Origin: Haliotis rubra
Taxonomy: Eukaryota
Length of the DNA: 64,000 nt
Direction: 5' to 3'
Assembly (NCBI RefSeq): GCF_003918875.1
Contig: NW_025767127.1
Coordinates: forward strand, 62,001-126,000
The translations under genes and the position numbers were made by a program. Position 1 is the first letter of the stretch; every line of letters starts with the position of its first letter. Of this stretch, positions 33,093 through 55,315 are shown in pieces. Below the pieces are notes generated by a model, which saw nothing but the letters and a program-made list of their open reading frames with translations, had not been told where the DNA came from and did not search any database.

Positions 33093-34159
33093 ATGGTTCT
33101 TTTGTAAATATTTTTCTTCAAGGATAAACATTTGTCAAAATGCTACAAATTGAAAAAACACAAATTATGTTTCAGACACCATCTCAGTGAATATGGAAGA
33201 GCAATGGAGTAAGTGGAACAACTGTGTGTGATGTAAGCACTGCACAGAAGGATATCACAGCTGAAGACAAGGAGTCAAGGTGTTACTGATGGGTGGTACA
33301 GCCTACTCCAGAAATTCACCACGCTGTACAACAAACATTCACAATACTTTCCAGGGACAGACTTCGCAGATAATATTCATATAGTTCTTAATTCATGTCA
33401 AAGAAGTGGCCCCTGAATACAATACAGCTAGATTTTAGGAGAAAGTCTCCCGGACCCCAGAGAATAAATTCAAAAAGAAATACCAACTCAAGTGTAGAAT
33501 GATTGGGCAAGTCTATGTTGCCTCAGCTGTAGGGAAATAATAACTTGTGCTCTATACTTTAGTAAATTACTAAATACCTTTTTATTAAATAAGAAAGCTT
33601 ATTTATTTTGACTAAATGTCAGTCTGAGGCTAATGGCTGTGTGAAGTCTGGAATGTACAAATCATTCAAATTTCAAGTTAGGATGAGTTGTCAGACAATT
33701 AGTATTATTCTTGTCTATAATTTCACGAAAGTATTTGATTCCAGTAAATGAACTTCATCAAGATTCAACACACTCAAGGGACAACAAGTTATGTAAAAAC
33801 ATATTGTTAAAACAAGTCACTCAAACAGAAAATAAATAAGACTGAACATAAAATAACCAGCAACAGTATGATCAGCCTACCAGTGCCATCACCTACATGG
33901 TACTTGCGTATGTAGAGACATTGTTGTTACCTGCAGGACAAGAAAGGTCCACCATACAGTATTGGTTAGCTGCACTAGTCATGTTGACTTCAAATGACAA
34001 ACTGGCACTGATCAGCATGTACTGGCTGCGATGAATCAATAACCGGAATAAAATTTAATGTTATTGTGCAGCCAATATTTTGATGTTGGAACCTGATGAA
34101 TTCACTTGGTTGCACCTGGTACAGGTATTGAAAAATAAAGAAATACTACCCTGGTGTTG

Positions 34160-34925
34160 AGAGCATGAGCTTGCCCAGATGAGTAGGAACTGGTTCTGAT
34201 GAGCATGAACTGCCTCTGATGAGCAGAAACTTGCTCCAATGAGCAGGAACAAGCAATGGTGAGCATGAACTTGCCCAGAAAAGTATGAACTGGCTCTGAT
34301 GAGCAGAAACTTGCTCCAATGAGCAGGAACAAGCAATGGTGAGCATGAACTTGCCCAGAAAAGTATGAACTGGCTCTGATGAGCATGAGCTGGCTTTGAC
34401 AATCATTCACTGGTCCTGATGAGCTCAAACTTGCTCCATTGAGCAGGAACAAGCAATGGTGAGCATGAACTTGCCCAGAAAAGTATGAACCTTCTCTGAT
34501 GAGCATAAAACATTTGTTCAGATGAGCGTGAGTATGACCAAGCTCTGGTTATCATGAACTTGCTCTGACGAGCACAAATTTGCTCCAATGAGCAAGAAAT
34601 GGCCTAGACAAGTATGAACCGGCACTGGTGAGCTTGAACTTGCCCCAATGAGCATAAACTTGCGTAGATGAGGATGAGTGAGCCCATAACCATCACCTCA
34701 CCCTGATGACCAGAAACTTGGCCGGATGAACATGAATTCACCCTGATAAGCATAAACTTGTCATGGTGAGCATGAATTCACCCTGATAAGCATAAACTTG
34801 TCATGGTGAGCATGCATTCACCCTGATAAGCATAAACTTGTCATGGTGAGCATGAATTCACCCTGATAAGTATAAACTTGTCATGGTGAGTATGAAGTTA
34901 CCAGGATGAGAATGAACTTGCCCTG
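34160..34925. repeat. 20-bp minisatellite with 80-bp and 40-bp higher-order units
   Basis: Tetramer gagcatgaacttgcccagaa|aagtatgaactggctctgat|gagcagaaacttgctccaat|gagcaggaacaagcaatggt, followed by (caccctgataagcataaacttgtcatggtgagcatgaatt)x4. Confidence 0.93.
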
Positions 34926-36646
34926 TCCAGATTGGCATGATCTGGCCCTGAAACATTTTCTTTAGCTTAAGTTACCAAAAAGAGTTTTCTGATATTCGCT
35001 GTGAAACATACTCACTGAATTCAGTGTCTGGGAAGTCAGAGGTAACAATTCTCTTCCCACAGAGGTTACTTGTCATATCTTCCTACTAACCTCTGTTCTA
35101 ATGCAACCCTTTCATGGTGAGATGTTCAGGATTCGTGATTGGTTGCAATCAGATTTAGTTGTGCAATCAGCGATGCCGTTTCAAAAGTGATCATTCCCAA
35201 GGCCTCTGTAATTTTTGTATGCTTCAGGAATACTAGAACCTCTTCCCCTGTGCAATGCGTAAACATTTCTTCTAGACAGAACTCAGTCATGTAATGGCGG
35301 ATCAATGGCGTCTCCACCACCCTCGTTGTACTTGCATTAGTCAAGCTGGATCTAAGTCAACGTAACACGTGCTCTGATTGGATAGAAAGAAGGGACATAA
35401 TTCGTGTTGCAATTTTTTGCCGCTAGGGGATTTTAGGAGAACCGGCAAATATGGCCGTATTAGAACAGATGTTCGTAGGAAGATATGACAAGTAACCTCT
35501 GTGGGAAGAGGATGAGAGATAACATGCAGTAACAGTTAAGGTGTGAAATACATAAAAACAAAGAAACTTTCTCCTAGGAACCATGGTCTGGCAAACTGGC
35601 AGACATTGTAATTTGCATCTAGGCATTCAAATACCATGAAGCTGTGGTGGTTGAGCAGGTTAGGCGTCTGACTTTGCGTGCTGGCAATTAGGTGCCTGAC
35701 TCTGAGAGTGTGTGTTCAAATCCTGGATGTGACTCAACCCAACAAAAGTACAAGAATCTGTACTTTACTAAGAAAGTGTAATCCCAAACATAACATGTGT
35801 AACATTCAAATACCACTTTGTACGCTCACTCCAATTCTGACATGTTGATCAATGTAACAATCAATAATTACCCTACTAAGAAACACACATTGTCTAAGAT
35901 TCAAACATTCACAAACCTGTTAACATCTGATTTACATTTGGGACTTTGGTAACCACAGCTTGTCCTTGGAGCAGAGAAACAGGATTGACATTGTCATCAT
36001 CATACACCAGTTGTGTTTATCACTGCTCATGTTGTCAATAATTTGATTGTCTCATTCAGACGTGACTTCTTGTAGACTGTCATCACATAGCTGGAATATT
36101 GCTAAGTTTTGTTTTAAAAAATTACACATTCACAAATCACAACATCTAGTCTTTAGTGAAACTGGGCATCAAACTGAGAAGCTCCTTAACTATAATCATG
36201 AACCGGACTGGGACAAAGAAGAAGCGCTACTAACAATCACTTACAACCTAGGAGCTACTGGCAAACAAGGATAAGTTGGACCAGTGCAGAGAACGCGTTA
36301 CGAGAAGTAAGCGGTGCACGGCAATGAGCAAACCCATTTGGTTTGTGAAAGGTAGAGCAGATGTAGGCTAGTGCACATGCATTACATGATGATGAAATTG
36401 ATTCCGCACGTAGCTGCACACGCCTTGCTCATAAGACTCTCACATCGGTAAAGAAAGTCTCACTACACTTGATCGCGGACAACCTGGGGCCCCTTCGCTA
36501 ACAATGGCAAGCGACAGTGGGCAGCACTCATACATGCTAATTCGGGTCAATTGTCAGGTCGGTGCTCAACGTATCCTTGTTTGTCAGTAGCTAGTTGTGG
36601 ATTTCCACCATAGCACACTATAGAGAGTAAACACATATAGCAAACA

Positions 36647-39325
36647 CTACTGATGAGAATTCCCTGGATTTGCCATGTAAGCATAGTCACTTAGGGTCAT
36701 CCCAAACTGGTTGGCAAGGTGAGAATAGTATGCATACATGGAGGGCCATGGTTGGGGCGAGGTAGGGAAGTTGTTACTGCTGCTGCCAGATGTAGATGGG
36801 TCAGTCCGTGTTGGGGGAGTGTCTGGGGGGTAGGGGGAGGGTCGCTCATCTGGGCTCTCCTGGGGGTACTGAGCTTGTCTGACCCCTCTGTCTCGGTTCA
36901 CTGAAGAATAGTGGGGCACTCTGTCTCCTCGGTTTGAGGGTTCAGGGTAATGGATCGAGTTGTCAATTTTCTCAGGATCAGACACAAACGTTGCATGGAG
37001 ACTGCTGCCATCTTGGCAGGTATCTGTTGTGTACTGAGCACCTCTGTCAACATGTGCATCATGGGTGTAGCGGTTGTTATGGTTACTGGTAAATCTGGAA
37101 TCCTGCTGGAGAGGTAGATACGGATGTGCAGGACTATCTGTTCTACCCATCTGCCCTTCCACAGGTAATTCATGGTCTTGACTCTTCTGCTGCAAAGCTT
37201 CATGGCTGTGTGGCCGACTTGGGGTGTCTATGTAGGCTGTCTGAGAATGCTGCTGTTCTGTGTGCGGTGTTTCTAGGTAGGAGCTGGAATCATGTTTATC
37301 ATGAGTGAAGTCCGGCTTCTGCAGCTGGTTGAGTTCTGGTTTGAGAGAAGGATACCACTGAGATGAGGAGGATGAAGCAGGATGGATGCTTCTGTGACCT
37401 GACTGATCAACACTATGTTCCTCCTGTAAACCAGGGTTCGACAGGCTAACATCAGCATATACATCAGATTTGTACACACTGTACCCCGAGTTGGAAGGTC
37501 TCACCACCTCTGGAGAGCCAGGTCCATCTGCCAGTGGTAATTCTACAGCCTTAGCTGCTGCAGCAAGAACATCCATCTCAGTAGAAGCCGTTGAATCTTG
37601 ATGATCAATTTTTTCCTCGATTTCCGATATTTTCTCAACATGGTAATTCAGAGCCCCTTGCACTTTGCATATTATGTCTTCTCTCCATGTTTTGGCATCT
37701 TTGTGGATTTTATGAACCAAAATCATGTGGCGACGAATGATTGAAGCATCACTGAAAGTCCTGGAACACAGCTTACATATAAATGGCTTATCTCCCTTGT
37801 GAACCCTCTCATGTCTCTGAAGAGCTTGTTTTTGTGTGAACTCACGCCCACAGTCACTACACACAAACTGCTTTTTTTGTTCATGAATTCTCATATGCAT
37901 TTTTAAACCAGATCTTTGACTGAATCCTTTGCTACAAATTTCACAGATAAATTGCTTAGCACCAATATGAACATATTTATGATCTCGTAGCGCAGATTCG
38001 TAACAAAATCCTTTACCACACACTTCACATATGTGAGGTTTAGCACCAGTGTGAGCATTTGAATGCTCTTGCAGTGAATGTTTAGTTGTAAAGCTCTTGC
38101 CACACACTGAACACAGAAAGCTCTTCTTCTGACCCAAATGTTCAGATTTCACGTGGCATGAAAGAATGTAATTACTACAGAATGACTTTGGACACATACC
38201 ACACTGAAATGTCGGCCTCGAGTATCCTTCCTCGTGAGTCTTCTTATGCTCCTGCATTGCTTTTCGGATTTTATACATTTTCCCACAAACATCACAACAA
38301 TGCTGTGGCTCAACATGAGATGCACGATGACGCTTCATGTACCGACGGTTAGGGAAGACTTTGTGACATATATCACATTTGGTTGGGTTAGCAAGGTGAA
38401 CTCTATGCCGGTGATCTCCAAGTGTGTTCCGATTTTTGGCAACAAAATCACATTCAGGGCAAGGAAATTCCTCTGGATCTCCTTCAGGGAACTTTCGAGG
38501 TCGACCCCTTCCTCTACTTAATTTCACTCCATCATCATGTATAGTTCGCTTTAACCTTGTATACTTTTTCCTGTGATTGAATTTGGATCTGAATTTGGTG
38601 AATATTCTTTGACTTGGAAGACCAGGAGAATGCTTTCTAGGACGTCCTCGTTTCCGCTTGACCGACTGCTCGGTCGCTTCAACACTTTCCATGTTCATAC
38701 TTTCAACATTTTCAGGTTCAGATTCATCAGCTGAACAGTTATTGGTGAAGTCTGTTACATGTTGTGTATGGTTTTTTGTTGTGGTACTAGTGGCAGTTGA
38801 TTCTGACTTTGGTAACGTGAGTGATTTTATTGCTTTCCTCTTCTTCACATGCTTTCTAAATTTAGCTTTCATGACAGTCTCACCTGTGTCACATTCTCCC
38901 TTTAGTTCCATCCTATCATGATTTGATGCAGTAACTTCTGTCTTACTTTGGGTAACTGGAGTGAGTGTGTCCTGTTGTGAAATGTGGTTTTCTTCTGCGG
39001 CAGTACATGATCCAGATTTTAGAAATACACTTGATTGGCTGTGAAAATCTTGTGTGGGTGATGGTGAAGGCGTATTCCTTGGGACCACTCTGGCTCCGTA
39101 CACTGCCAATGCTGTAGCAAGCAGGCTATGGACCTTCTCCATAGCGACCCACACACCATGCAGAGAAATGTGTTTACTATCACCACCATTCCCTGTCTGA
39201 ATCTCCACCCCAGCGTCCTCGCTGACTTTTCTCACCATTGCATGATAATCAAAGTCTGTGGGAAATTTCCCTTGTAGATCTTTGTCAATATCTGCAACCA
39301 CATTGGAAAATATTCTCGTCACCAT
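36647..39325 (-). CDS. Intronless AT-hook + 9x C2H2 zinc-finger protein (892 aa)
   Basis: Long open ORF with two AT-hooks (KRKRGRPRK, RGRGRPRK). Nine CxxC..HxxxH fingers run from CPEC..HRHRVH to CKLC..HMILVH, with TGAKPH/KGDKPF-type linkers. There is an in-frame stop 4 codons upstream of the ATG and a low-complexity S/P/Q/H-rich C-terminus. Confidence 0.93.
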   Translation of the reverse strand: MVTRIFSNVVADIDKDLQGKFPTDFDYHAMVRKVSEDAGVEIQTGNGGDSKHISLHGVWVAMEKVHSLLATALAVYGARVVPRNTPSPSPTQDFHSQSSVFLKSGSCTAAEENHISQQDTLTPVTQSKTEVTASNHDRMELKGECDTGETVMKAKFRKHVKKRKAIKSLTLPKSESTATSTTTKNHTQHVTDFTNNCSADESEPENVESMNMESVEATEQSVKRKRGRPRKHSPGLPSQRIFTKFRSKFNHRKKYTRLKRTIHDDGVKLSRGRGRPRKFPEGDPEEFPCPECDFVAKNRNTLGDHRHRVHLANPTKCDICHKVFPNRRYMKRHRASHVEPQHCCDVCGKMYKIRKAMQEHKKTHEEGYSRPTFQCGMCPKSFCSNYILSCHVKSEHLGQKKSFLCSVCGKSFTTKHSLQEHSNAHTGAKPHICEVCGKGFCYESALRDHKYVHIGAKQFICEICSKGFSQRSGLKMHMRIHEQKKQFVCSDCGREFTQKQALQRHERVHKGDKPFICKLCSRTFSDASIIRRHMILVHKIHKDAKTWREDIICKVQGALNYHVEKISEIEEKIDHQDSTASTEMDVLAAAAKAVELPLADGPGSPEVVRPSNSGYSVYKSDVYADVSLSNPGLQEEHSVDQSGHRSIHPASSSSSQWYPSLKPELNQLQKPDFTHDKHDSSSYLETPHTEQQHSQTAYIDTPSRPHSHEALQQKSQDHELPVEGQMGRTDSPAHPYLPLQQDSRFTSNHNNRYTHDAHVDRGAQYTTDTCQDGSSLHATFVSDPEKIDNSIHYPEPSNRGDRVPHYSSVNRDRGVRQAQYPQESPDERPSPYPPDTPPTRTDPSTSGSSSNNFPTSPQPWPSMYAYYSHLANQFGMTLSDYAYMANPGNSHQ

Positions 39326-39974: not shown

Positions 39975-40138
39975 GTGTTGGGGTCTATTTTGAGAGTATT
40001 CAGAGGTGGGGTAGTACCATTGTATTCAGTACGCAGATTCAAGGTCGAAAAACAGTACACATAAATTTATTATATTCTGTTTGTTTTTTCAATATATATT
40101 TTTTTCAGTCGTTCAAATTCAAGTCGCACATTGTATTA

Positions 40139-40408
40139 GAGTGAGTGAGTGAGTTTAGTTTTACGGCGCACTCAGCAATATTCCAGCTATATGGCGGCGG
40201 TCTGTAAATAATCGAGTCTGGACCAGACAATCCAGTGATCAACAGCATGAGCATCGATCTGCGCAATTGGGAACCGATGACATGTGTCAACCAAGTCAGC
40301 GAGCCTGACCACCCGATCCCGTTAGTCGCCTCTTACGACAAGCATAGTCGCCTTTTGTGGCAAGCATGGGTTGCTGAAGACCTATTCTACCCCGGATCTT
40401 CACGGGTC
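40139..40408 (-). mobile_element. SINE family A full copy
   Basis: Near-identical to the 51409 copy; TSD cacattgtattagag. Confidence 0.93.
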
Positions 40409-40497
40409 ACATTGTATTAGAGATTCAGGGATGAGCCATGTGCTTACACCCACAGTGTATGTTAATTGTGCAATACATAACAGCAAATGTTATCGAT

Positions 40498-41362: not shown

Positions 41363-41735
41363 TCCCGGGGAAGACTCCGGTTCGAATTGGTCACCAACAA
41401 GCATGATTGTCGTAAGGGTTGGCATGAGGATGGGGTGGTGTGGTCAACTTCGCTGACTTGATACATGCCATCGTATCACAACTGCACAGATCGATGCTCA
41501 CGATGTTGATCACTGGCTCGTCTTTTCCAGGATCGATCATTCACAGACCACCGCCATATAGCTGGAATATTGCTGATTGTGGCGTTTTAACAACAACCAA
41601 CCAACCAAAACTGCCCTGTAGGTTATAATCTGAAGGATTAAAAATGTCAGTTACGGGATTGTCTGGTACAGACTCTTACAGACCACCGTCGTATAGCTGG
41701 AATATTGCTGAGTTCGGCGTTAAACAACAAACAAA
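41363..41735 (+). mobile_element. SINE family A diverged copy plus a second 3' fragment
   Basis: ...cagaccaccgccatatagctggaatattgctga..gcgtt occurs twice. Confidence 0.8.
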
Positions 41736-42610: not shown

Positions 42611-42892
42611 TTCTAGTGTATACCACACGGGTGGATAAATTCCAGTTCTACATGTCAGCTTTGCATCCAGACAACTGGGAAATAGCCAGATGGGGAAGGT
42701 CGGTGGTGTTTTTACTTTTAGTGAAATGCACGAGATAAGCGAAGATGTTGCCAGGCCATACAAGGATCACAATCGGTTTGAACCTGGGATTCGATCAGCG
42801 GACTCTGGTATGACTACAGGAGGAAGCCCTGCAACGAGAAGATGACCGCATCTTCATTAGTAGCATTCATCTAGGCGAGGTCAGTTTTGTAC

Positions 42893-44130
42893 ATTGACGT
42901 ACTGGGAGTATAAATAACCTCATAACAACGTTTTAGCGGTATGAATGACGCACTGAGAGTATGAATGACGTACTGGAGGTAGGTACGACGTACTAGAGGT
43001 ATGAATGACCCACTATAAGTATAAATGACCTACTACAGGTATAAATGTCATTCTATAGGTATGAATGACGCACTGGAAGTATGAATGACGTACTGGAGGT
43101 AGGTACGACGTACTAGAGGTATGAATGACCCACTATAAGTATAAATGACCTACTACAGGTATAAATGTCATTCTATAGGTATGAATGACCTACTACAGGT
43201 ACGAATGACATTCTATAGGTATAAATGCCGTATTGGAAGTATGAATGACCTACTATACAGGAATGAATGACATTCTATAGGTATGAATGACCTACTGCAG
43301 GTATGAATGACCTACTATGACGGTACTAAAGGGAATGAACTACAGGTATGAATGACATTCTATAGAAGTATGAATGACCTACTATACAGGTATGAATGAC
43401 CTACTAGAGGTATGAATGACCTACTAGAGGTATGAATGACCTACTAGAGGTATGAATTACTTACTAGAGGTATGAATGACTTACTAGAGGTATGAATGAC
43501 CTACTAGAGGTATGAATGACTTACTAGAGGTATGAATGACTTACTAGAGGTATGAATGACTTACTAGAGGTATGAATGACCTACTAGAGATATGAATGAC
43601 CTACTAGAGGTAGGAATGACTTACTAGAGGTAGGAATGACTTACTAGAGGTATGAATGACCTACTAGAGGTAGGAATGACCTACTAGAGGTTTGAATGAC
43701 CTACTAGAGGTATGAATTACGTACTAGAGGTATGAATGACTTACTAGAGGTTGAATTGGCCTACTAGAGGTATGAATGACTTACTAGAGGTATGAATGAC
43801 CTACTAGAGGTATGAATGACTTACTAGAGGTATGAATGACTTACTAGAGGTATGAATGACTTACTAGAGGTATGAATGTCTTACTAGAGGTATGAATGAC
43901 CTACTAGAGGTATGAATGACCTACTAGAGGTATGAATGACCTACTAGAGGTATGAATGACTTACTAGAGGTATGAATGACCTACTAGAGGTATGAATGTC
44001 TTACTAGAGGTATGAATGGCCTACTAGAGGTATGAATGACCTACTAGAGGTATGAATGACCTACTAGAGGTATGAATGACCTACTAGAGGTATGAATGAC
44101 ATACTATAGCTATATGAATGACGTACTGGA
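42893..44130. repeat. 20-bp minisatellite (ggtatgaatgac(c/t)tactaga)n
   Basis: Homogeneous array at 43390-44100; the diverged left part contains a 120-bp higher-order duplication. Confidence 0.97.
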
Positions 44131-44419
44131 GTGAGTGAGTATGGTTTCAGCAATATTCTAGCAATATAATACAGCATGGACCCAGTCGGACCGAACACAG
44201 ACCAAACTCTTCTGAGTGAGTGAGTGAGTGTGTATATGTTGCTTTAAGCCCCATCAGCAATATTGTACTTATTCGTGGCGATAATCACTTCTGCTAGAGC
44301 CAACTTTGAGAATGTTGAGTGAGTTTAACCACTAATTGTCACTATGCATGTTTTTTGCCTTACTGCACTTCTTGCCCATGCGCGCCACAGTCGGTTCTAT
44401 TGTCTGGCTGATGGGCCAA

Positions 44420-44661
44420 GGTTGGTTGGTTGTTGTTTAACGCCACACTCAGCAATATTCCAGCTATATGGCGGCGGTCTGTAAATAATCGAGTCTGGAC
44501 CAGACATTCCAGTGATCAAAAGCATAATCATCGTACTACGCAAATGGGATATGATGACATGTGTCAACCAAGTCAGCGAGTCTGACCACACGATCCCGTT
44601 AGTCTCCTCTTACGAGGAGACTGAGTTACAGAAGATCAATTCTAACTGGGATCTTCACGGG
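44420..44661 (-). mobile_element. SINE family A full copy
   Basis: Family A body with (aacc)n tail; TSD tgggccaa. Confidence 0.9.
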
Positions 44662-45895
44662 TTTGGTGGGCCAACCGACCAAAGCCAAAAACTTCAAGGC
44701 CTCCGTTTTCAAAAACGTTTTATACTACCCAAGAGGAAGACATTTCCAAATTTGACACACAAGTGACAAAAATGATGTCCGGTGTAATTCAGTGCTGTAC
44801 TATGGTTTCTGTCCTTGTTCAAGTGCACAATTGACTAGCCTTTTCATGTGTTTATGAGGTACAATGCTCCACAATACGCTCACCTTTCCGCAAACTCCTG
44901 GTACCATCACAGTATGATGTTGATTCATTTATTCATAAACACATGCTCACGTCAGTCAGAAAGTGTACCGACTCATATGGACTGACTCAAATGGGGTGTA
45001 TGGTTTGTGGCCTGCAGATAACTTTCATGAAATGCACCCCTAGTTGAGGTGTTGATCCACTTGTAGGAGGATAATACAGCCAATGAATGAGGCTTTGGTG
45101 TGTACTAGCTCTGCACAGTGTAGTACACAAGTGGCATAAGTTGGCCAAAATGTTGTGTTGGTATTAAACTGTTTAATTTACTGTGTCTTTGCAAAGATGA
45201 ATCTGTAAGACTTGGTCTGGCATTTGTCTAACTCTGGGTAACTTTTGAGTTGCCAGTTTAAATACCTGTCTATATATCTACTGAATATTCAACAGTGTTA
45301 CATTACAGGTAAGCCTGACCTGAGTGGTGCCTGCAGCATCAGGAACGTTCTATCAGGTACAGATTAACCTGTGATTTAGTAGAAGCAGGTACAATCTACA
45401 ACAGGCGTTATATAGTCTCCCTGGTAGAAGAGAACCTCTGACCAACTCAAAAACAAGGCTATTGTGTATCTCCAGTAAATTTATTCCACATATGCACAAA
45501 AAGCTTAATATTGAAATATAACAACAAAATGTACCAATTTCTGGTATAATTCAGACACCACATTATCAGACTATAATCAACAAAAAGATACATGCAAATT
45601 TGATTTGATAGGAGATGCATCAACATAGAAGTTACAACATCTCTTCTTTACCACAAACAAATAACATACCACTCACATCACATTCGGAATCTCTCTTTCT
45701 CTGCACATTATGACTAAATATGAACCGTGTTATGTCAAGATGAAATATCTTAATGTCTAATATATTGCGAGATTAATATTGTCTAAACAATAAGCAAAAT
45801 TTATATCCTTGCAAACAACCTGACACCAACATTCAACACAGCATAGCAAGGATATGGAGACATAATGTGATAACTGTTCTATTATCTTTTGAAGA

Positions 45896-46472: not shown

Positions 46473-46488
46473 TCACTTGAACAGGAAG
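46473..46488 (-). CDS. TUSC3: MAGT1/TUSC3 terminal coding exon (SFLFK*)
   Basis: tttcag|C TTC CTG TTC AAG TGA completes the typical YPYSFL(x)K C-terminus. Confidence 0.85.
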
Positions 46489-49400
46489 CTGAAATCATAG
46501 AAAGTACAGTGAGAAAGTGCCAGTATATTACTCATCCATATGTATCAAACAACGTGAAACACAAAAGCTATGTATACAGCTTGATGCCACTGTAGGCTCA
46601 GTAAACTGAATCAAACAACGTGAAACACAAAAGCTATGTATACAGCTTGACGCCACTGTAGGCTCAGTAAACTGAATCAAACAACGTGAAACACAAAAGC
46701 TATGTATACAGCTTGACGCCACTGTAGGCTCAGTAAACTGAATCAAACAATGTGAAACACAAAGCTATGTATACAGCTTGACGCCACTGTAGGCTCAGTA
46801 AACTGAGCCATGTCTGATCCAACTTGGTCATCATCATCTATCGGAATTACAGATGTCTGAAAATCAGAAAGTCGGATGACAGCTTGCCTCATCAGTTTGT
46901 GCTCAAAACAGCATCAGCAATATTCCAGCTACAAAGAAGCCTGTAAATAACAGTCTGGGTCAGAAAATCCAGTGTTTGCTATATCAGGCAATGACCCAAC
47001 TATTCCGGGGACAATGACATCATATCAACCAAGTCACTAAAGCTTATTACTCCTCCTCCTTTCAGTTGCCTCTTATGACCAGCAAAGGTTGATGAGGACC
47101 TATTCCAACCTGACACCCCCCACAGATACATCATCAGAGTGCAGGAATATTCAAACAAACCAGTGATGAGCTCAACAGCTACATACACATGTGTCCCACA
47201 AGTCCATGGATACTAATAGTCAAGCTGTATGACAATCTGAAATGCCGGACTATTCTATCTGGTGATCTGCAGTGACAATGCAGTACATTCCTTTCAACAG
47301 TATTCCACAACAGGCCGTAACACGGAATAAATCTGGGGCAGGAAATCCAGCGGTTATCAAGATCAACACCCTCAGGCAGGACAATGCTGAGAGGCTATGT
47401 TGTGACAAACAGATCGTCAGCTACTGTAACATTCCTGGAGTACTGAGGCCAACCCCTGAACATCCTTAGGGATGCTGAAGCCTTACCTGTAAGGATAGCC
47501 CTGGTACTTCGACCGGAACACAGAGAGGAGGAGACTGAAGAATATTGCCACACACCCTAGACCGACCAGAGCCAAAACTATAAAGAAAACACACAAAACA
47601 ATCAATACAATTAGTCCTAAAGAAACATGGCAATAATCAAGTCTTCAAGTGTATTATATATTTAGTTCTTTACGGATCACTCAGCACTGTTCCAGCAATG
47701 AGGGCAGCCTGTATTCAGGTTATTGATTTTATGAACAATGAGCAACACTGTTGGGATACAAGGACACATTGAACCAAGTCACAGAGTCTCACAACCCAAT
47801 CCATTACATCCATGCATGACCATAGATGACTGGAGACTTACTCTACCCAGATTCCCCTGGGAACAACCAGCTTAGGTTGCTTTAAACCTGTTCGCAGTAA
47901 TAGATGGCTCTGGCACTTAGAAAATGACACAGATGTGAAATTATAAACATGGAGATCAGAGAACAAGCAAAAGTGGAATGATTTTAATGATTGTTAACAA
48001 TAAATATATGCCCCTTCTACAGTTCTGTTCATGTAACACAGGAAAATACAGAATGTCACATAACTGTAGCAGGGACTTACACAGATTACCTACTGATTGG
48101 TCTAGTTGGTTAGGGACTCTCAATAAGCTAAATGTGGAATTGCAACTTGCTATTACTATCTCCTCCATCTCTCCTATAACTTTAAGTCGAACGAGATAAA
48201 AAGGCATCATCAAAGAGAATAAGTAATTTTATCACTTTATCAATTCTACTGTTCAGACAAATCCTTCCTTTGAAACCTGGCTGAAAGGTGAACAAATACT
48301 TACTCCTCTTCTTCCCAGGGTCCCCCTTGAGAGAGTGAGCTTCGTTCATCAGGATGAAGCCGAACACAACAGCAGTGTCTACACAAGGTCAAGGTCACAA
48401 ACACATTCAGGTGTCACACTGTCTGCATGATTTTGTCATGTTCAAGTAAAATACAGAATTACACAACAAAATTGTTTTTGAAGCCATTTCCAGTGTGCGA
48501 AATTTACGCTGGTCCTGTGGTCCCTGGCTAGTAAAAATTCATAAGGACCAGTAAATGATAAGTTTGCAGTGGTCTTCGATTATTTCAATTAATCGGACCA
48601 CCACTAGTGGGTAGAGCAAGGATACTGAGAAGCATAACGATGTACGTCTCCATGATGAACTGGCCTTGGCTGCTGCCGTGGATGTAGTGCTTAAACATAC
48701 AGTAACAATGGTAACAGACCACTGAATATTGGACATAGAGTTTCACAAGACACAAACACAGAAGACAGTATAGGTTAATGCTACTTTGAAAGTTACGTCA
48801 GTAATAGCACGGAATGTCAGTTTGACGTGAAAGGCCTGCAGTGGTATATCAGATAAATCCTCTAAATAAAGAGTCTGTATAAACATGAATCCTATTTGTG
48901 TAAACACAATCATAGAGCTATACATGCAACAAAAATAGACAATGAACATGTTGCAATCAATGTTATTTTCTTAGATGTACATGATATACAGATTTACATG
49001 TTGCAATCAATGTTATTTTCTTAGATGTACATATTATACAGATTTACATGTTGCAATCAATGTTATTTTCTTAGATGTACATGATATACAGATTTACAGT
49101 GTTTCAGAAGTGAGTTTGGACTAGAGCCTCTGTGAACAATACTTCATTTGATGTGGGAGAAAGCCCCTAATGATGCATGGCTCAACATTTACAACATTGG
49201 TGAAACCCACAAGCCTGCATATGGGGGTTGACATAAATATAACCAAGATGAGCCAGACAATGATGATATGGTCGAAGAACCATAATGCTGGACAGGTGAC
49301 TGAGGCTCATGTGTCCCTGTTTTTCAGAAGTGATTTATGTCTTGAAATGAACCAATAACTGGATTAATGCTTTGCCACCAATTAGTAAAAATGCTAAATG

Positions 49401-52400
49401 CTATGACATTTATTGATGTTAAAACAAGTGGAAGTGTTCTGAAGACCAAAATATATCAAGCATGTCAATGGAGAATGACTGAAAAGGACTGAAAAGACTT
49501 TTGCAAAACAAATACCTCTTTATGATTCATGTTTGGCATTTAAACATCATAAATTTTCATAACCAAAAAATTGTGACTTTACACAGAAATATGACAGGCC
49601 TGTATTTAGTGCAACTGTTTTGAAAAAAGAAAAACAGTACCTATATATTTTTCCCCTAGGTGATGATTATTACCCAATGAGATGACAATTAGAACTTTGC
49701 CCAAAATCTTTTAATCACCCCAACATACAACACAAAAAGCAAAGACGAATTTACATGCATGGTGTATCTACTTGCAAACACACAACAATGTGAACTGTCA
49801 GACAGCAATCAATTCAACTCATATGAGGAAGGAATACGGATCTAACTCCTACATGGAAAATGCCCATCAAAGAAGTCCTACATGAAACTCAAAATGTATC
49901 CTCAACAGAAGTAAACCGAAGAAAGAACACACTGTAATGCTTACTGTTAGTATACAGGAATGGTTAGGTTCATTATAGTTTTCAGAATTCTTTTGGGGGG
50001 AAATGTCTGAAATAATTCCAAAACTCTTTTGCCATTTACTATATTTAGCTTGTACTCATTTTCAACAAAAAGTATACACTTTTTTTAAGAAATGTCTGTA
50101 TATTACTAAATGAAGATTGTATTCATTGTGAATTAGAAATACAGTAACAAGCGACTTCAAAGTTAAGAAATCACAAGTAATAAGTTAGTTGTCATGGCAA
50201 CAAGTAGATACACAGCGAGCATCCCAGTCTTCTCCTATTCTGACGAGCCAACACAGCTGCTGTCTTTATCACAGAAACAGGGAGGATCCCACAATAGGAG
50301 CAACTTAAACATGATACAAACCTTCCAGGAAAACTGGGGCAAATTTAAAACAACGGTTTCATCAAACATGCAAACAAATGCTGACTGTAAGCAATGCTTA
50401 AGTATCATGATACATCCACAATATCATATTTCTCTATCAGTGCAAACAATGTTCAAATATACATTAATACTTCTACACAGACACGATGGGTGTTTTAATG
50501 CAGCACATGCAGAATATGGCAATACCACAGACAAATTACTGATGACATGAAAACAGAAAATGCCTGTCAGGATAACAATTTAAAGACAAGAACTAATACA
50601 CATGTGTGAAATTCCTAAAAAGAAATCATTTTTAAATACTTACCATGGCTCCAGTGTGAGGGTTGCGGTGCATGAGAGGAGGGCCACGGATGTGGTTCCA
50701 CATCTGTCCCGATGTCATGGCAAATATCACAGCCTGGACAGAGAGATGATCACATTTGCAATCAGAACGAAAAGAAAGTGAGCGACTGCCAGAGTGAGTT
50801 GGTAATAATATAGCTTTGAACAGTACTCAAGTTGTAATCATGGAATAATATGGAAGAAAGAGCCTGATGTGAAGTTGGGTGAAACCAACAAGCCTGTATA
50901 TGGGGATGACATAATCTTAATCAATGAAACATAACATAATGTGATGGTACAAGATGACCCCCGGCTCACTCGGAATATTCAACACATGCTCAATGACCCT
51001 AGTGTGACAAATAACAACAAAGTCAAACAATGATGGAGCAAACCCTGTGGTTACCCACCCAATGCAATCCGATCCCCATCCCCACCCCCATTGCCATCCC
51101 CACCCCCATTGCAATCCCATCAATGTCCTCCTGCCAAACCCAACCACATTCAACACTCTACCACCCTGCAAACTCAACATCACTCAACACTATCCACCAG
51201 CAACATACCAATGCTCCAATTCCCCATGATGTTTTGTTGTACAGGAACTCAAGGTTGTTGCGCTTCAGGTACAGCAGTCCTCCGATGAGAGAGAAGAGGA
51301 GGGCCAAGGCCAGGGTACCTGAGTAGTTCGGAGGACGGAATACACGGATCTGAAAGAAAACCACTCAGTGTTAACTTGCTTATTTGTCAATCCTCTCTTT
51401 ATATGAGAGAGTGAGTGAGTGAATTTAGTTTTACGCCGCACTCAGCAATATTCCAGCTATATGGCGTCAGTCTGTAAATAATCGAGTCTGGACCAGACAA
51501 TCCAGTGATTAACAGCATGAGCATCGATCTGCGCAATTGGGAACCGATGACATGTGTCAACCAAGTCAGCGAGCCTGACCACCCAATCCCATTAGTCGCC
51601 TTTTACGACAAGCATTGTCGCCTTTTATGACAAGAATGGGTTGCTGAAGACCTATTCTACCCCGGATCTTCACGGGTTGCTTTATATGAGAGAATACATG
51701 GTACATTATTATCCAATAACACAATCATGCATTGTATATATGTTCTGAAGCTCTGTTTAGTTATACAATACCAAACTTGTGCAGTTAATCAGCAGTGACT
51801 TACCACCCCTGTAGAAAGCTTATACCTAATCATTTATAAGAGGTACCTGTATATCTGTTCTTTCACCGACCCATCTTGCTATCTGTTCTGCAGCAAAACC
51901 GACCCTGGAACAAACATGTTGCATGTGAAACAAAAAGTACAAATTACCAATCAGTCTGTAATTGGTGTCAAGGAATTATCACAAACGGAACTGAAATGAT
52001 ACCATCTTGGACCTGACATGGCATCATGGAAATGAGATACCTATAGCTTCTACTCTCATCAATGCTAAACATACATGAGACAGGAGGATTGGACACTAGT
52101 TCAAGACTTGTATTTATCCAGTTGTTGTTCAACACACGCACAGCAATATTCCAGCTAGGTGACGGTAGTCAGCTTAATGAAATCTTGACCACACAATCCA
52201 GTGATTGATATAATAAGCAACAACCCATGCCATCAGGATACTCTGACACGGGAGCCACCTTGTCACTGAATAGGACCATCAGAACCAACAAACTCCTTCG
52301 CGTATGACCAGTAGGTTGGTGAGAACCAATTCCAATCAGGAAACACCATGGGTTCCAAGACTTGGGAATATCTTGGCAGCTAGTAGTTATCCTGCTAACT

Positions 52401-54954
52401 GAAGTAACATGAATAACTGGTACTAAATGAAGTGCTGACATCTGGTTCTATCCTCATGGTGTCAACTGATAACCATGCTGTAGACTAGTGGTGGGAATTG
52501 GTTAAAATCTCATAATTGATGATTGGTCCATTACAACCGATCAATCATCAAAATAATTGGTTAGCGTCATTTATCAAATGTTCCTGTTGTCTTTGTAAAA
52601 AATAAAGAAAAAACATGTAATAATTTGGGTTTTTTGCAAATTAAACAAAATCCATTTGCAAATTTTGCATGTTTAAAGGATTATTAGTATGTTAGGAACA
52701 CAGATTTCCTGGATTCTTTAAGATAAATTCAATCATGACTTGGAACGAGCTTGTTGTGCTTATGAAATGTAAATTTAATGACACAGACAAAAGCAACCTT
52801 TTGAAAAATATTGTTGATGCAAACAAGTGTTCCAAGATTGGTTGTGTTCGATTATGAGAAAACATGTTCGATTGCTTGGTCGTTAAGTCACTGCGACCAA
52901 TCTTCGATTATTTCAATTAATCGGTTATTTCAATTAATAGGACCACCACTACTGTAGACCCTATACATACCTGTTTATGTCTAGAGAGTCTCCCTTCTTG
53001 GGTTTGCCCTTAGGAGGGAAGTGCATAAACACAGGGGCAGTGTTCAGCTTCAACTGAAAGAGACAAATATAACAGTAAGATAGTATGACAAATGCACAAC
53101 TTACAAAGTCAATCCTTTAACAACATTTAAGAGTAATTTCATTTATTTAAATATCAAATGGACTCAGAATTGGTTAGTGAATGCAGAATTAGGCAAAAGC
53201 CTTTGTTGGTATTTTAAATATCTATATCAACATAGTTGTAAGTGTATGCCCACCAATGATAATGCTGTAAATATAATGGTAACCAAGGCAACACTCACAT
53301 TCTGGAACACATCTGGTCCCTCATCATAGTCAACCAGAGCAAAGAAGAGTTTGTTGGAGAACTGCTGGGAATAGCGCCAAGAGTTGGCCAGGATGGTATA
53401 CTCCTCGTTTGCCTGCCTGGAACCCAACAAACATTGCCTCAGTAGTCAGTAGATCAACACATAGCTGGATATTCACACGAGTTAGCTTATCATAACATGA
53501 GCCATATCCTTATCATGATATTGCAGCAATCCTGCTGGAAAATTACTGAACATGCATAAAACCATTCTAACCATCATCTCAGTAAAAGAAAAGCCAAACT
53601 GTACATCTTAAATGTTATTTTACTGTAACTGCCACATCAGCTTTATTTCAGAAAGCATAGGGACTATTAATATTATTATCTATATAGAAAATTACACTGA
53701 ACAAGAGTACATAACTGTACTACAAAACTTAGGAAAGTCTTTTGGATAAGTTCCTGCATCCTTCCAATGGTGACTCACCTACACACTGAGCACTGTCTCT
53801 GTGCCTGTAGAGCTGTCAACATCACAATCACAGAATAGTTCCTAGGTGCCGTCTAAATATCTCTTCATCCAATGATCCAATCGATCTCAAACTGTGCAAG
53901 TGGATGTTTTGTCAGACAACCTAATCACATTGTAAATCACCGATTTTATGCATTTCTATTAAAGAATCTGTCTATGTAACTGTCAACAAAATAAACAGCA
54001 GAACGCAGACTGCTTGCCGAGGGAGGGAGCCAATGACCTGTAACAGCGTCACTGTTGGGTCATAAAGGTAAATGCACGTGCAGTTCATGATAGTTACCTT
54101 TGCACTGCACAGTGATAGACCGTTTGGATCATTCACATTGACTACTTCTAGCTGTCATCATGAAAGCTTATTCAGATGATGCTAAACGTTTCATGAGAAA
54201 TGTGTTGTATTTTTTTTAAAAGAGAGCAAACGTTGCAAACCAATTTATAAGGTGTCGGATTACATGAAACGTACATAGCTGACCTACATTGACGAACGTT
54301 GACCTTTATAACCCAACACTGCCGCTGTTAAAGGTCATTGGCTCCCTCCCTGTGCAAACCGTCTGCAATCTGCTGTATATTTTGTTGACAGTTACATAGA
54401 CAGATTCTTTAATACAAATGCATAAACTCGATGATTTACAATGTGATTAGGTTGTCTGACAAAACATCCACTTGCACAGTTTGAGATCGATTGGGTCATT
54501 GGATGAAGAGATATTTACAAAAAAACGGGTCCACATGCATTTCATGCCAAACTATAGTCTAACTATTTGCGACAGCCCATGTGGCGTGGTAATGTTCTGG
54601 CTAATTAGATTAACTCATTAGCCCAGTGCAGCTTCAAGCTGGCAAAGTGAATTCGATCCTCCACGCAGTGCTAACCGCAATACCAAAAGTGAGTGGAGTG
54701 CTTACTTCATTCTATCCAAATTATTTCCTGCATATTGCTGTCGAGTGTGCGCGAAATCTGGAGGTATAGACAGGCAATTTGTATTCACGACCAGCAAAAA
54801 GGAGGTGCTTGATGACGATAACTCTGCATTTGCTTTTTGTGTTCTACATCTGAATGTGCAATGCACGTACCTCTTTTTTCTTGTAGTTTTGTCCTACAGT
54901 TGTCAAACAAATACAAAACAACACCAAAATGCCAAAGCTTGCTCTGGCCTCCAT
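46473..54954 (-). CDS. TUSC3: OST3/OST6-family oligosaccharyltransferase subunit (MAGT1/TUSC3 orthologue), 11 coding exons, ~297 aa as assembled
   Basis: Exons: 54871-54954, 53779-53852, 53299-53416, 52971-53053, 51847-51904, 51209-51349, 50644-50733, 48626-48689, 48304-48378, 47487-47577, 46473-46488. All introns are GT-AG with consistent phases. Family motifs present: [71 protein letters not shown]. Confidence 0.95.
46544..46807. repeat. 66-bp tandem repeat x4 in last MAGT1/TUSC3 intron
   Basis: Unit atcaaacaacgtgaaacacaaaagctatgtatacagcttgacgccactgtaggctcagtaaactga. Confidence 0.95.
47487..47577 (-). CDS. TUSC3: MAGT1/TUSC3 exon 10
   Basis: Encodes [29 protein letters not shown]; boundaries ttatag| and |gtaagg. 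Confidence 0.95.
48304..48378 (-). CDS. TUSC3: MAGT1/TUSC3 exon 9
   Basis: Encodes [24 protein letters not shown]; boundaries tgtag| and |gtaagt. Confidence 0.95.
48626..48689 (-). CDS. TUSC3: MAGT1/TUSC3 exon 8
   Basis: Encodes [21 protein letters not shown]; boundaries tttaag| and |gtatcc. Confidence 0.93.
48946..49098. repeat. 50-bp tandem repeat x3 (intronic)
   Basis: Unit acatgttgcaatcaatgttattttcttagatgtacatgatatacagattt. Confidence 0.95.
50644..50733 (-). CDS. TUSC3: MAGT1/TUSC3 exon 7
   Basis: Encodes [30 protein letters not shown]; boundaries tccag| and |gtaagt. Confidence 0.95.
51209..51349 (-). CDS. TUSC3: MAGT1/TUSC3 exon 6
   Basis: Encodes [47 protein letters not shown]; boundaries tttcag| and |gtatgt. 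Confidence 0.95.
51409..51677 (-). mobile_element. SINE family A full copy (intronic)
   Basis: TSD ctttatatgagaga; shares an internal duplication with the 40139 copy. Confidence 0.93.
51847..51904 (-). CDS. TUSC3: MAGT1/TUSC3 exon 5
   Basis: Encodes [19 protein letters not shown]; boundaries ttccag| and |gtacct. Confidence 0.93.
52486..52951. mobile_element. hAT-like MITE with perfect 8-bp TSD ctgtagac
   Basis: TIRs tagtggtgg / ccaccacta; TSD present on both sides. Confidence 0.88.
52971..53053 (-). CDS. TUSC3: MAGT1/TUSC3 exon 4
   Basis: Encodes [28 protein letters not shown]; boundaries tttcag| and |gtatgt. Confidence 0.95.
53299..53416 (-). CDS. TUSC3: MAGT1/TUSC3 exon 3
   Basis: Encodes [39 protein letters not shown]; boundaries ccag| and |gtgagt. 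Confidence 0.95.
53779..53852 (-). CDS. TUSC3: MAGT1/TUSC3 exon 2 remnant ([25 protein letters not shown])
   Basis: Contains the CxxC motif and donor AG|gtgagt. Its 5' boundary abuts the foldback element (tttag|ACG). Confidence 0.85.
53854..54517. mobile_element. Foldback/MITE-like element, 664 bp, ~220-bp inverted arms, TA at both ends
   Basis: The left arm taaatatctcttcatccaatgatccaatcgatctcaaactgtgcaag... is the reverse complement of the right arm ...cttgcacagtttgagatcgattgggtcattggatgaagagatattta. The spacer is non-coding. Confidence 0.9.
54871..54954 (-). CDS. TUSC3: MAGT1/TUSC3 exon 1 (signal peptide, [28 protein letters not shown])
   Basis: aacATGG start context, hydrophobic core, conserved KKKE end, donor GAG|gtacgt. 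In-frame upstream ATGs also exist (e.g. 54996). Confidence 0.85.
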
Positions 54955-54969
54955 GTTGCCGGCGGATGT

Positions 54970-55315
54970 TGACGTGGATGTGACCATGGATGCCATTGGA
55001 TAAAAGTTCGACCCAATCGGTGCTTGCGTTATATAATTCGGATGGAGCGCTAGCGCAGCATGCCCAGGGGCCACACTGAAACTTCTATAATGCTGTGAGT
55101 GAGTTAAGCTTATAGTCACATTGGCAGTATTTCAGCCAAATCGTGATCCTTTCAATAAGAAAAAAAATCTACTGGAAGTAATGGTTTTTTCTGTAACTAA
55201 TACATTTCCTACATGCATGATGTTTCATTTTAGTCTCTCATTTCCCATTTCATATCATTGTGTTTCTAAGACAACGTGGGCTACGGGTGATATGTTCTGA
55301 GTGAATATCACGTCA
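54970..55315. promoter_or_regulatory. Putative MAGT1/TUSC3 proximal promoter with UPRE-like motifs
   Basis: TGACGTGG at 54970-54977, TGACGTGA (minus strand) at 55308-55315, CCAAT at ~55013 and TTATATAA at ~55029, all immediately upstream of exon 1. Confidence 0.45.

What the first reader, a model, noticed from the sequence alone, without database searches (positions are those of the whole stretch)
53779..54870. Foldback element on the exon-2 acceptor of MAGT1/TUSC3, with ~32 conserved codons missing but frame preserved
Seen: exon 1 ends KKKE in phase 0. The next recognisable coding sequence starts at TAPRNYS, directly after a 664-bp inverted-repeat element whose terminal TA supplies the acceptor (gagatatttag|ACG). 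I could not find the conserved segment that lies between KKKE and PRNYS in MAGT1/TUSC3 proteins (the LxEKVxQLxxW...NGDKF region, ~96 nt) in 53853-54870. Removing the element leaves ccgtttttttgtag|ACG, a good acceptor. Inference: one possibility is a TE-associated deletion allele giving an in-frame protein of ~297 aa that lacks the start of the thioredoxin-like fold but keeps CSVC. The alternatives are a mis-spliced or null allele, or a misassembly caused by the palindrome. This is notable because it affects a conserved N-glycosylation gene.
Basis: partly seen in the sequence, partly recalled or inferred. Interest (0 to 1): 0.85.

Follow-up and report, generated by a model that had tools for sequence, protein, structure and literature searches.

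The report
Transposon-linked deletion truncating abalone TUSC3 exon 2
In the blacklip abalone reference genome, a 664-bp hairpin-shaped mobile element sits where about 0.5 kb of the glycosylation gene TUSC3 (a splice site and 32 conserved codons) is missing; this is most likely one damaged gene copy or a local assembly fault, not a new protein form.

Summary
The window is 100% identical to the Haliotis rubra reference assembly (GCA_003918875.1). Its TUSC3/MAGT1 orthologue lies on the minus strand. Exon 1 ends in KKKE. A 664-bp TA-flanked foldback MITE abuts the next coding block (TAPRNYS...). Exactly 32 codons are absent from the whole 64-kb window.

H. rufescens, H. asinina and H. cracherodii all carry those 32 codons (ESVGDKVQQLTEWNLKKSVIRLTGDKFRQYVK in H. 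rufescens; 1-3 substitutions in the other two). There they form the 5' part of a single 170-nt exon 2.

Measured against H. asinina, 536 nt are replaced in the window by 704 nt. The lost 536 nt are the 3' 442 nt of intron 1, including the true acceptor, plus 94 nt of exon 2. The 704 nt are 41 nt of uncertain origin plus the MITE. So the "good acceptor" left by removing the MITE is not the ancestral one.

Read contigs of two related organisms leave the window at the two breakpoints. A relative's mRNA contig has room for the missing 96 nt. RefSeq annotates only N-terminally truncated proteins here (263 and 259 aa).

Best reading: a derived, TE-associated deletion on the assembled haplotype, probably a null or hypomorph and possibly heterozygous. 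Local misassembly remains a serious rival. An in-frame 297-aa protein is possible but unsupported. Interest is low to moderate.

The parts
54871..54954 (-). TUSC3 exon 1 coding part: signal peptide through KKKE, 28 aa, phase 0, donor gtacgt
   Evidence: It is 27/28 identical to H. rufescens P0250 residues 1-28.
54559..54870 (-). Native 5' part of intron 1, homologous to congeners
   Evidence: Window 55069-54559 aligns to H. asinina L003 2935-3437 at 83%. Window 55034-54709 aligns to H. rufescens and H. cracherodii at about 90%.
54518..54558 (-). 41-nt block of uncertain origin between the native intron and the MITE. Its last 13 nt (acccgtttttttg) may be native intron.
   Evidence: It has no global alignment to the congeners. 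An 8-nt match ACCCGTTT lies right after the H. asinina breakpoint (18 of 2000 shuffles do as well). It occurs once in the window. X1's contig starts at 54531, and an RNA-type contig of organism B covers 54373-54551.
53854..54517 (.). 664-bp non-coding foldback MITE: arms 53854-54079 and 54292-54517, loop 54080-54291, with TA at both ends
   Evidence: There is no ORF of 60 aa or more and no internal tandem sub-repeat. Summed read depth is 3-4 orders of magnitude above the flanks in organisms A and B and near zero in organism C.
53779..53852 (-). Remaining 3' 74 nt of exon 2 ([24 protein letters not shown] plus 2 nt). 53853-53854 (AG) are the last two bases of the ancestral Lys codon and now serve as the only in-frame acceptor AG.
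   Evidence: Homology to the congeners resumes exactly at 53854.
53820..53822 (-). Internal ATG (the Met of VIVMLTAL) used as start codon by both RefSeq models of H. rubra
   Evidence: P0290 and P0349 begin [14 protein letters not shown]. The CDS starts at L002 8001, which is window 53822.
53299..53416 (-). Exon 3 ([39 protein letters not shown])
   Evidence: Pfam OST3_OST6 E = 5.5e-9. PDB TUSC3 4M91 E = 5e-17.
46473..53053 (-). Remaining intact exons. E4 53053-52971, E5 51904-51847, E6 51349-51209, E7 50733-50644, optional 12-nt micro-exon 50333-50322, E8 48689-48626, E9 48378-48304, E10 47577-47487, terminal exon 46488-46473 (SFLFK, stop).
   Evidence: There are no stops or frameshifts, and the model is 99% identical to H. 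rufescens.

Best explanation
The window is the haploid, haplotig-purged Nanopore/Illumina reference assembly of the blacklip abalone Haliotis rubra.

On the assembled haplotype, the single TUSC3/MAGT1-type OST subunit gene carries a derived, transposon-associated deletion. About 0.53 kb of ancestral DNA is gone. That DNA comprised the 3' ~440 nt of intron 1, with the branch site, polypyrimidine tract and true exon-2 acceptor, and the first 94 nt of the 170-nt exon 2. A 664-bp TA-flanked, non-coding, high-copy foldback MITE sits exactly at the breakpoint, together with 13-41 nt of uncertain origin.

The simplest mechanism (inferred) has two steps. The MITE first inserted into intron 1. A one-sided deletion then ran from its 3' end into exon 2, through aberrant transposition or break repair at the hairpin-forming element. 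By accident the deletion left ...TA|G ACG, that is, an AG in frame.

Consequence (inferred): the allele is most likely a null or hypomorph. The surviving AG has lost its pyrimidine tract, and stronger cryptic acceptors inside the MITE give premature stops. If the in-frame junction is used at all, the 297-aa product lacks helix 1, strand 1 and helix 2 of the thioredoxin-like domain.

The species as a whole very probably has an intact copy, and the sequenced individual may be heterozygous.
For: Shown:
- The window is 100% identical to GCA_003918875.1 contig QXJH01000442.1.
- All other exons are intact and 99% identical to H. rufescens. The only difference of note is one clean 32-aa gap.
- H. rufescens, H. 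asinina and H. cracherodii each have one 170-nt exon 2 containing the 32 codons.
- Homology to H. asinina stops at 54559 and resumes at 53854. H. asinina's 536 nt are replaced by 704 nt in the window.
- The MITE anatomy and its lack of coding capacity are established.
- DNA contigs of organism C (X8), which lacks the MITE family, match the window up to 53854 and 54559. They then run on for 177 and 303 nt that do not lie on the window. Contigs of organism B (X2) stop matching at 53854 and 54555.
- X1 is Illumina contigs of the best DNA holder, probably the source sample. Its contig contains the native-intron/41-nt junction (it reaches 54531). Its exon-2-side contig ends exactly at 53854, as expected at a graph branch.
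- A 1006-nt spliced contig of organism B (X12) has 187 nt 5' of the 74-nt exon-2 part. About 92 nt of that lie on exon 1, leaving about 95-96 nt, the size of the missing piece.
- The acceptor pyrimidine fraction is 0.40, against 0.50-0.75 for the other acceptors. Cryptic acceptors with first exon bases at 54012 and 53979 give stops.
- The RefSeq proteins XP_046582052.1 and XP_046582053.1 start at the internal Met.
- The assembly is haploid-collapsed from an individual with 1.27-1.44% heterozygosity (PMC6774278).
- The deleted residues 29-60 form helix 31-44, strand 48-50 and helix 52-60 in the model of the intact orthologue.
Against: - No read or contig was seen that crosses the MITE/exon-2 junction at 53855/53854. 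That junction rests on the assembly alone.
- The read laying tables were swamped by a SINE, so the joints, loose ends and the letters of the mRNA contig were not shown. The 91 + 96 reading is arithmetic, not sequence.
- Contig ends are only indirect evidence of heterozygosity. The exon-1-side contig runs 24-28 nt past the point where a branch would be expected if the other haplotype resembled organisms B and C.
- The junction is not at a clean TA of the ancestral exon, so a simple transposase-mediated adjacent deletion is not demonstrated.
- The assembly differs from all four runs at 53380, 53487 and 53781, which shows residual assembly error nearby.
Confidence: 0.6

Rival explanations
1. Local misassembly. 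The real H. rubra genome has an intact exon 2, possibly with the MITE elsewhere in intron 1. The wtdbg/DBG2OLC/QuickMerge pipeline dropped about 0.5 kb next to a high-copy palindromic repeat.
For: - The assembly came from Nanopore coverage that the authors present as modest, using wtdbg 1.2.8 plus DBG2OLC. It was merged, polished once with Pilon and haplotig-purged.
- The assembly letters at 53380, 53487 and 53781 disagree with all four runs.
- No contig seen crosses 53855/53854.
- RefSeq found no N-terminus here.
- The relatives and the relative's mRNA are intact.
Against: - X1's Illumina contig includes the junction of native intron with the 41-nt block (54559/54558), so at least the left side of the rearrangement exists in reads.
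- X1's exon-2-side contig ends exactly at 53854 instead of running on into an intact exon, as X2's and X8's contigs do. This implies that a second continuation, the MITE, exists in the reads.
- Consensus or polishing errors do not usually swap 536 nt for 704 nt.
Confidence: 0.25
2. Exon 1 is spliced to the tag|ACG acceptor supplied by the element's flanking TA. This yields a stable in-frame 297-aa TUSC3 that lacks the start of the thioredoxin fold, possibly common or fixed in H. rubra.
For: - Phase 0 to phase 0. The rest of the ORF is intact, and CSVC and all transmembrane exons are kept.
- An AG is present at the right place.
Against: - This is the poorest acceptor context in the gene, and better cryptic acceptors lie in the MITE.
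- Both RefSeq models start at the internal Met rather than at MEARASF, although the latter would give a longer ORF.
- The deletion removes a helix, a strand and a helix of the compact Trx-like domain.
- The rest of the gene is 99% identical to a congener, so there is no sign that the locus has evolved for long with the deletion.
Confidence: 0.08
3. Nothing is missing. Either the segment is encoded by an unrecognised, diverged small exon in or near intron 1, or abalone TUSC3 naturally lacks it.
For: Frame-shifted scraps in 54700-54760 loosely resemble the expected residues (..IIW....LDRM..) by eye.
Against: - The profile HMM of the segment finds nothing in six frames of the 64 kb.
- That stretch is ordinary intron, conserved with the congeners.
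- Three Haliotis species encode the 32 residues in exon 2.
Confidence: 0.02

Closest known systems
TUSC3 (N33) / MAGT1, the Ost3p/Ost6p-type oxidoreductase subunit of the oligosaccharyltransferase (Pfam PF04756; PDB 4M91/4M90 TUSC3 luminal domain, 6S7T OST-B with MAGT1)
   Same: - The exons match PF04756 and the PDB TUSC3/MAGT1 chains.
- The CxxC motif (CSVC), the KKKE after the signal peptide, and the C-terminal [15 protein letters not shown] are all present.
- The model is 99% identical to the annotated H. rufescens TUSC3-like protein.
   Different: The window copy lacks 32 residues of the luminal thioredoxin-like domain (helix, strand, helix) that every one of the 34 homologues used for the segment HMM has.
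Tc1/mariner-type (Stowaway-like) MITEs with long terminal inverted repeats
   Same: - TA at both ends.
- Long, near-perfect terminal inverted repeats.
- 664 bp with no coding capacity.
- Very high summed read depth in two organisms.
   Different: - The arms (226 nt) make up two thirds of the element, so it is almost a pure hairpin.
- No autonomous partner or transposase link was examined.
- The flanks here are not the two halves of one target site, so the TA duplication cannot be verified at this copy.
Transposon-adjacent (flanking) deletions produced by aberrant or abortive transposition or by repair of breaks at TE ends, as described for P elements, Ac/Ds and bacterial IS/Tn elements (from general knowledge)
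   Same: - One TE end is retained precisely.
- The DNA next to it is missing, while the other side looks like ordinary intron up to or near the element.
   Different: - The mechanism is not demonstrated here.
- The breakpoint in exon 2 is not at an ancestral TA.
- 13-41 nt on the other side are of uncertain origin, so filler DNA or an indel of another kind is equally possible.
Human TUSC3 exon deletions (recessive intellectual disability) and MAGT1 loss (XMEN disease), from general knowledge
   Same: Structural loss of 5' coding sequence in the same gene family.
   Different: - Those are established disease alleles in mammals, which have two paralogues.
- Here it is one haplotype of a reference assembly of a mollusc. 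No second full-length Haliotis TUSC3/MAGT1 homologue stood out in the protein searches. No phenotype is known.

Membership tests
OST3/OST6 family (TUSC3/MAGT1) | Significant match to Pfam PF04756 and to solved TUSC3/MAGT1 chains | tested here: met
   - Exon 3 scores 36.3 bits and exon 2 scores 28.8 bits against a cutoff of 27.
- PDB 4M91 E = 5e-17 and 6S7T_H E = 7e-14.
OST3/OST6 family (TUSC3/MAGT1) | Luminal CxxC active-site motif | tested here: met
   CSVC is encoded at the end of the retained part of exon 2.
OST3/OST6 family (TUSC3/MAGT1) | Complete thioredoxin-like luminal domain, including the N-terminal helix-strand-helix (LxEKVxQLxxW...NGDKF) | tested here: not met
   - Pfam profile positions 1-26 have no counterpart in the window.
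- The segment HMM finds nothing in the window.
- There is a 32-aa gap against P0250.
- The missing elements are H31-44, E48-50 and H52-60 in the model of P0250.

The gene is an orthologue by descent, but this copy cannot encode the complete domain.
OST3/OST6 family (TUSC3/MAGT1) | Signal peptide plus C-terminal multi-pass membrane part | tested here: met
   - Exon 1 encodes a hydrophobic N-terminus.
- Exons 6-10 are 100% identical to P0250, in which the model shows long helices at 181-201, 210-233, 256-285 and 290-318.
- The model has moderate confidence (mean pLDDT 64).
Tc1/mariner-type MITE (Stowaway-like) | Terminal inverted repeats | tested here: met
   226-nt arms, 92% complementary, starting at the very ends of the element.
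Tc1/mariner-type MITE (Stowaway-like) | TA target-site duplication | tested here: inconclusive
   - TA is present at both ends.
- A generic family contig in X1 starts at the TA at 53854.
- The two flanks of this copy are not contiguous in any congener, so the duplication of a single TA cannot be verified.
Tc1/mariner-type MITE (Stowaway-like) | Short, non-coding, multi-copy | tested here: met
   - 664 bp, with the longest ORF at 54 aa.
- Summed word depth is 1e5-9e5 in the MITE bins against about 1e2 in the flanks for X1 and X2.
- The tool warns that depth is not a copy number.
- Only one copy lies in this 64-kb window.
Tc1/mariner-type MITE (Stowaway-like) | Sequence relation of the termini to an autonomous Tc1/mariner transposon | not tested
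   No abalone repeat library or whole genome was available in the tools.
Foldback (FB) elements in the strict sense | Long arms built of tandem sub-repeats, with a 9-bp target-site duplication | tested here: not met
   - There is no tandem array in the arms apart from one 20-nt, 2.3-copy trace.
- The flanks show TA only, with no 9-bp duplication.

The most novel reading that the evidence does not exclude
H. rubra, or a common haplotype in it, actually expresses the in-frame 297-aa TUSC3. Its exon-2 acceptor AG would be completed by the TA flanking a foldback MITE. This would be a natural OST subunit that keeps CxxC and the membrane part but lacks the first helix-strand-helix of the thioredoxin fold, tolerated because one intact allele remains or because the oxidoreductase function is dispensable.
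Probability: 0.07. Interest if true: 0.5.

Novelty: new member of a known kind. Interest (0 to 1): 0.25.

Why it matters
The main value is practical.
- The H. rubra reference carries a damaged or mis-built copy of a conserved N-glycosylation gene.
- RefSeq therefore lists only N-terminally truncated TUSC3-like proteins for this species. These should not be read as a lineage-specific protein form.

If the allele is real:
- It is a clean example of a hairpin MITE associated with a flanking deletion that removes a splice acceptor and part of an exon in a mollusc.
- It is a ready-made PCR marker, a presence/absence variant of about 170 bp net size difference, in a commercially fished species.

It does not open a new biological question.

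Tried and rejected
1. A hidden exon. I searched for it by eye in intron 1 and with a 34-sequence HMM over all six frames of the window. Nothing was found, and the eye-catching scraps lie in intron that is conserved with the congeners.
2. Pseudogene or paralogue. Rejected: all other exons are intact and 99% identical to H. rufescens. Only one H. rubra locus appears in the protein collection.
3. The 'pre-insertion acceptor' gtttttttgTAg. At first I accepted it as evidence that the acceptor predates the MITE. I rejected it after alignment with three congeners.
4. Other copies of the MITE or of the 41-nt block, to define the element's true ends. None were found in the window, L001, L003 or L004, nor in earlier notes of this scan by sequence.
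5. Exon-2 ORF fragments from Logan contigs of abalone runs, searched through the protein collection. Only distant non-Haliotis hits came back.
6. Read laying. The joint, loose-end and piece tables were swamped by a SINE at 51408-51693 that I had included in the stretch.
The truncated protein itself was therefore not modelled.

Full report
**What is there**

The gene lies on the minus strand. Exon 1 (54954-54871) encodes [28 protein letters not shown] and ends in phase 0 before gtacgt. The next coding block starts at 53852 (ACG GCA CCT AGG..., [24 protein letters not shown]) and runs to 53779.

Exon 2 and exon 3 match Pfam OST3_OST6 (PF04756) at profile positions 27-49 and 52-89. Exon 3 matches the solved TUSC3 and MAGT1 chains, 4M91 at E = 5e-17 and 6S7T_H at E = 7e-14.

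Between the two exons lie 353 nt of unique sequence and a 664-bp inverted repeat. Its arms are 53854-54079 and 54292-54517 (226 nt, 92% complementary) with a 212-nt loop. As single-stranded DNA it folds at -252 kcal/mol, z = -35. It has no ORF above 54 aa and no tandem sub-repeats. TA flanks both ends.

**The missing codons**

Thirty-four homologues from the representative search all carry the segment K(E)..L.EKV.QL..W....V.R.NGDKF...VK..PRNYS. A profile of that segment finds nothing in any frame of the 64-kb window except the PRNYS end itself. All the other exons are present and intact. The spliced model is 882 nt and 293 aa, or 297 aa with the conserved SFLFK terminal exon.

**Whose genome this is, and what the relatives have**

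The closest protein is 'tumor suppressor candidate 3-like [Haliotis rufescens]' (P0250, 329 aa). It is 290/292 identical to the model, with one clean gap of exactly 32 residues, ESVGDKVQQLTEWNLKKSVIRLTGDKFRQYVK, between KKKE and TAPRNYS.

The window itself is 100% identical over 21.8 kb to H. rubra GCA_003918875.1, contig QXJH01000442.1.

In H. rufescens (L001), H. asinina (L003) and H. cracherodii (L004; the accession is confirmed in PMC9709981), the 32 codons are the 5' part of one 170-nt exon 2. That exon is preceded by a normal acceptor...ttttag|GA(A/T)TCA.

**What changed at the DNA level**

Homology between the window and H. asinina runs from 55069 to 54559 (83%) and resumes at 53854 (84%).

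The 536 nt of H. asinina in between are 442 nt of intron, including the acceptor, plus the first 94 nt of exon 2. In the window they are replaced by 704 nt, made of a 41-nt block (54558-54518) plus the MITE.

The AG at 53854-53853 is the remnant of the ancestral Lys codon AAG (...GTN AAG ACN GCA...). Together with the T of the element's flanking TA it now reads tag|ACG.

So the 'good acceptor' that appears when the element is removed in silico (gtttttttgTAg) is not the ancestral acceptor. The element did not simply land on an acceptor. The acceptor and part of the exon are deleted.

The last 13 nt of the 41-nt block may be native intron. ACCCGTTT recurs immediately after the breakpoint in H. 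asinina, and only 18 of 2000 shuffles do as well. If that is so, the MITE is an ordinary intronic insertion, and the loss is a one-sided deletion running from its other end into exon 2. I could not settle this, because no other copy of the element or of the block is in the window or in the three other loci.

**Read evidence (all runs are Logan contigs with coded names)**

- The MITE bins have summed depths of 1e5-9e5 in X1 (organism A, the best DNA holder and probably the source) and in X2 (organism B). Single-copy flanks are at about 1e2.
- In X8 (organism C) the MITE bins are at 0-25. The family is therefore high-copy in A and B and nearly absent in C.
- X8's contigs match the window up to exactly 53854 and 54559, then continue for 177 and 303 nt that do not lie on the window. 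X2's contigs stop matching at 53854 and 54555 and continue for 314 and 413 nt. These are the same two breakpoints found against H. asinina, so these organisms do not share the window's structure.
- X12 (organism B, transcriptome-sized) holds a 1006-nt spliced contig in mRNA sense. Exon 3 starts at its position 262, so the 74-nt part of exon 2 occupies positions 188-261 and 187 nt lie upstream. The depth in bin 54852-54985 corresponds to about 92 nt of exon 1, and the next bin is empty. That leaves about 95-96 nt. There is no AG at 54964-54963 that could make a 5'-UTR intron boundary. The simplest reading is 91 nt of exon 1 plus the 96 missing nucleotides. This is arithmetic only, because the letters were not displayed.
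- In X1, one contig begins at 54531 and so contains the junction of native intron with the 41-nt block. The left side of the rearrangement therefore exists in Illumina data.
- The X1 contig coming from exon 3 ends exactly at 53854, with no MITE bases and no intact-exon bases. In a de Bruijn graph that is what a fork gives. It suggests that two continuations are present in the reads, that is, a heterozygous individual. This is an inference from a contig end and nothing more.
- The assembly letters at 53380, 53487 and 53781 differ from all four runs.

**The assembly and its annotation**

According to PMC6774278, the assembly was made as follows:
- wtdbg on Nanopore reads plus a DBG2OLC hybrid assembly, merged with QuickMerge.
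- Polished with Racon twice and Pilon once.
- Scaffolded with RNA-seq and reduced with Purge Haplotigs.
- The individual has 1.27-1.44% heterozygosity.

One haplotype per locus is therefore kept, and local errors are plausible.

RefSeq lists two proteins for this locus, XP_046582052.1 (263 aa) and XP_046582053.1 (259 aa). Both start at the internal Met of exon 2 ([14 protein letters not shown], window 53822) and neither starts at MEARASF. An RNA-supported in-frame junction of exon 1 to exon 2 would have given a longer ORF. Its absence from the annotation argues against the in-frame product, although only indirectly.

**Likely consequence**

- The acceptor context at tag|ACG has a pyrimidine fraction of 0.40 over positions -23 to -4. 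This is the lowest in the gene; the other acceptors and the congeners' exon 2 are at 0.50-0.75.
- Two better acceptors lie inside the MITE's 3' arm, with first exon bases at 54012 and 53979. Using either one puts stop codons right after exon 1. That would also explain why the longest ORF starts at the internal Met.
- In an AlphaFold model of the intact orthologue, residues 29-60 form helix 31-44, strand 48-50 and helix 52-60. The model has mean pLDDT 64, with 65-80 over most of the luminal domain.
- If the in-frame mRNA exists, its product would therefore lack three secondary-structure elements of the thioredoxin-like domain, while keeping CSVC and the membrane part.

**Verdict**

| Reading | Probability |
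|---|---|
| Derived, TE-associated deletion on the assembled H. rubra haplotype, most likely a null or hypomorphic allele and possibly heterozygous | about 0.6 |
| Local misassembly next to a high-copy palindrome | about 0.25 |
| Expressed in-frame 297-aa form | about 0.08 |
| Hidden exon or natural absence (refuted) | about 0.02 |

This is a known kind of event, a TE-linked structural variant or reference defect. Its main value is as a caution for users of the H. rubra annotation.

Noticed in passing
window 51408-51693 (also 28764-29049, 29829-30114, 40138-40423, 44415-44700, and inverted copies at 27608-27745 and 41458-41585): A SINE-like repeat of about 286 nt lies in intron 5 of TUSC3, with at least 7 copies in the window. 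Summed read depth is about 5e7 in X1 and of the same order in X2 and X8, so it is by far the most abundant repeat here. ARAGORN finds no tRNA gene in the window.
   Followed up: partly
L001 12346-12722 (H. rufescens): A 72-nt unit containing the 3' part of TUSC3 exon 5 ([14 protein letters not shown]) plus its donor is tandemly repeated 5.2 times at 90% identity in H. rufescens. The H. rubra window has a single copy.
   Followed up: partly
window 50322-50333 and 46473-46488: A 12-nt micro-exon (cag|TTTTCCTGGAAG|gt, FSWK) is used in RefSeq isoform X1. The conserved terminal exon encodes SFLFK and a stop. Reading through the exon-10 donor instead gives ...YPYR and a stop.
   Followed up: partly
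window 53380, 53487, 53781: The assembly letter differs from every run that covers the place. At 53380 all four runs read otherwise. At 53487 and 53781 X1, X2 and X8 do, and X12 has no contig there. 53781 is a synonymous TGT/TGC in the second Cys codon of CSVC. These are probably residual consensus errors or private alleles of the reference.
   Followed up: no
window 53854-54517 in the reads of X8: The MITE family is high-copy in organisms A and B but almost absent from organism C, whose flanks are otherwise alignable at 88% or better. This points to a recent, lineage-restricted burst.
   Followed up: no
window 945-3314, 34142-34956, 42814-44100, 46541-46828: Long arrays of short tandem repeats with periods of 20-22 nt, about 43 nt and 66 nt lie around the gene.
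   Followed up: no
window about 37900-39325 (minus strand): A C2H2 zinc-finger gene lies downstream of TUSC3. The collection lists an 892-aa product there with weak or faint zf-C2H2 hits, starting at L002 22498, which is window 39325.
   Followed up: no
window 54955-54996: An in-frame upstream ATG ([21 protein letters not shown]) precedes the conserved start. The H. asinina RefSeq protein (343 aa) is annotated from the equivalent upstream ATG.
   Followed up: no
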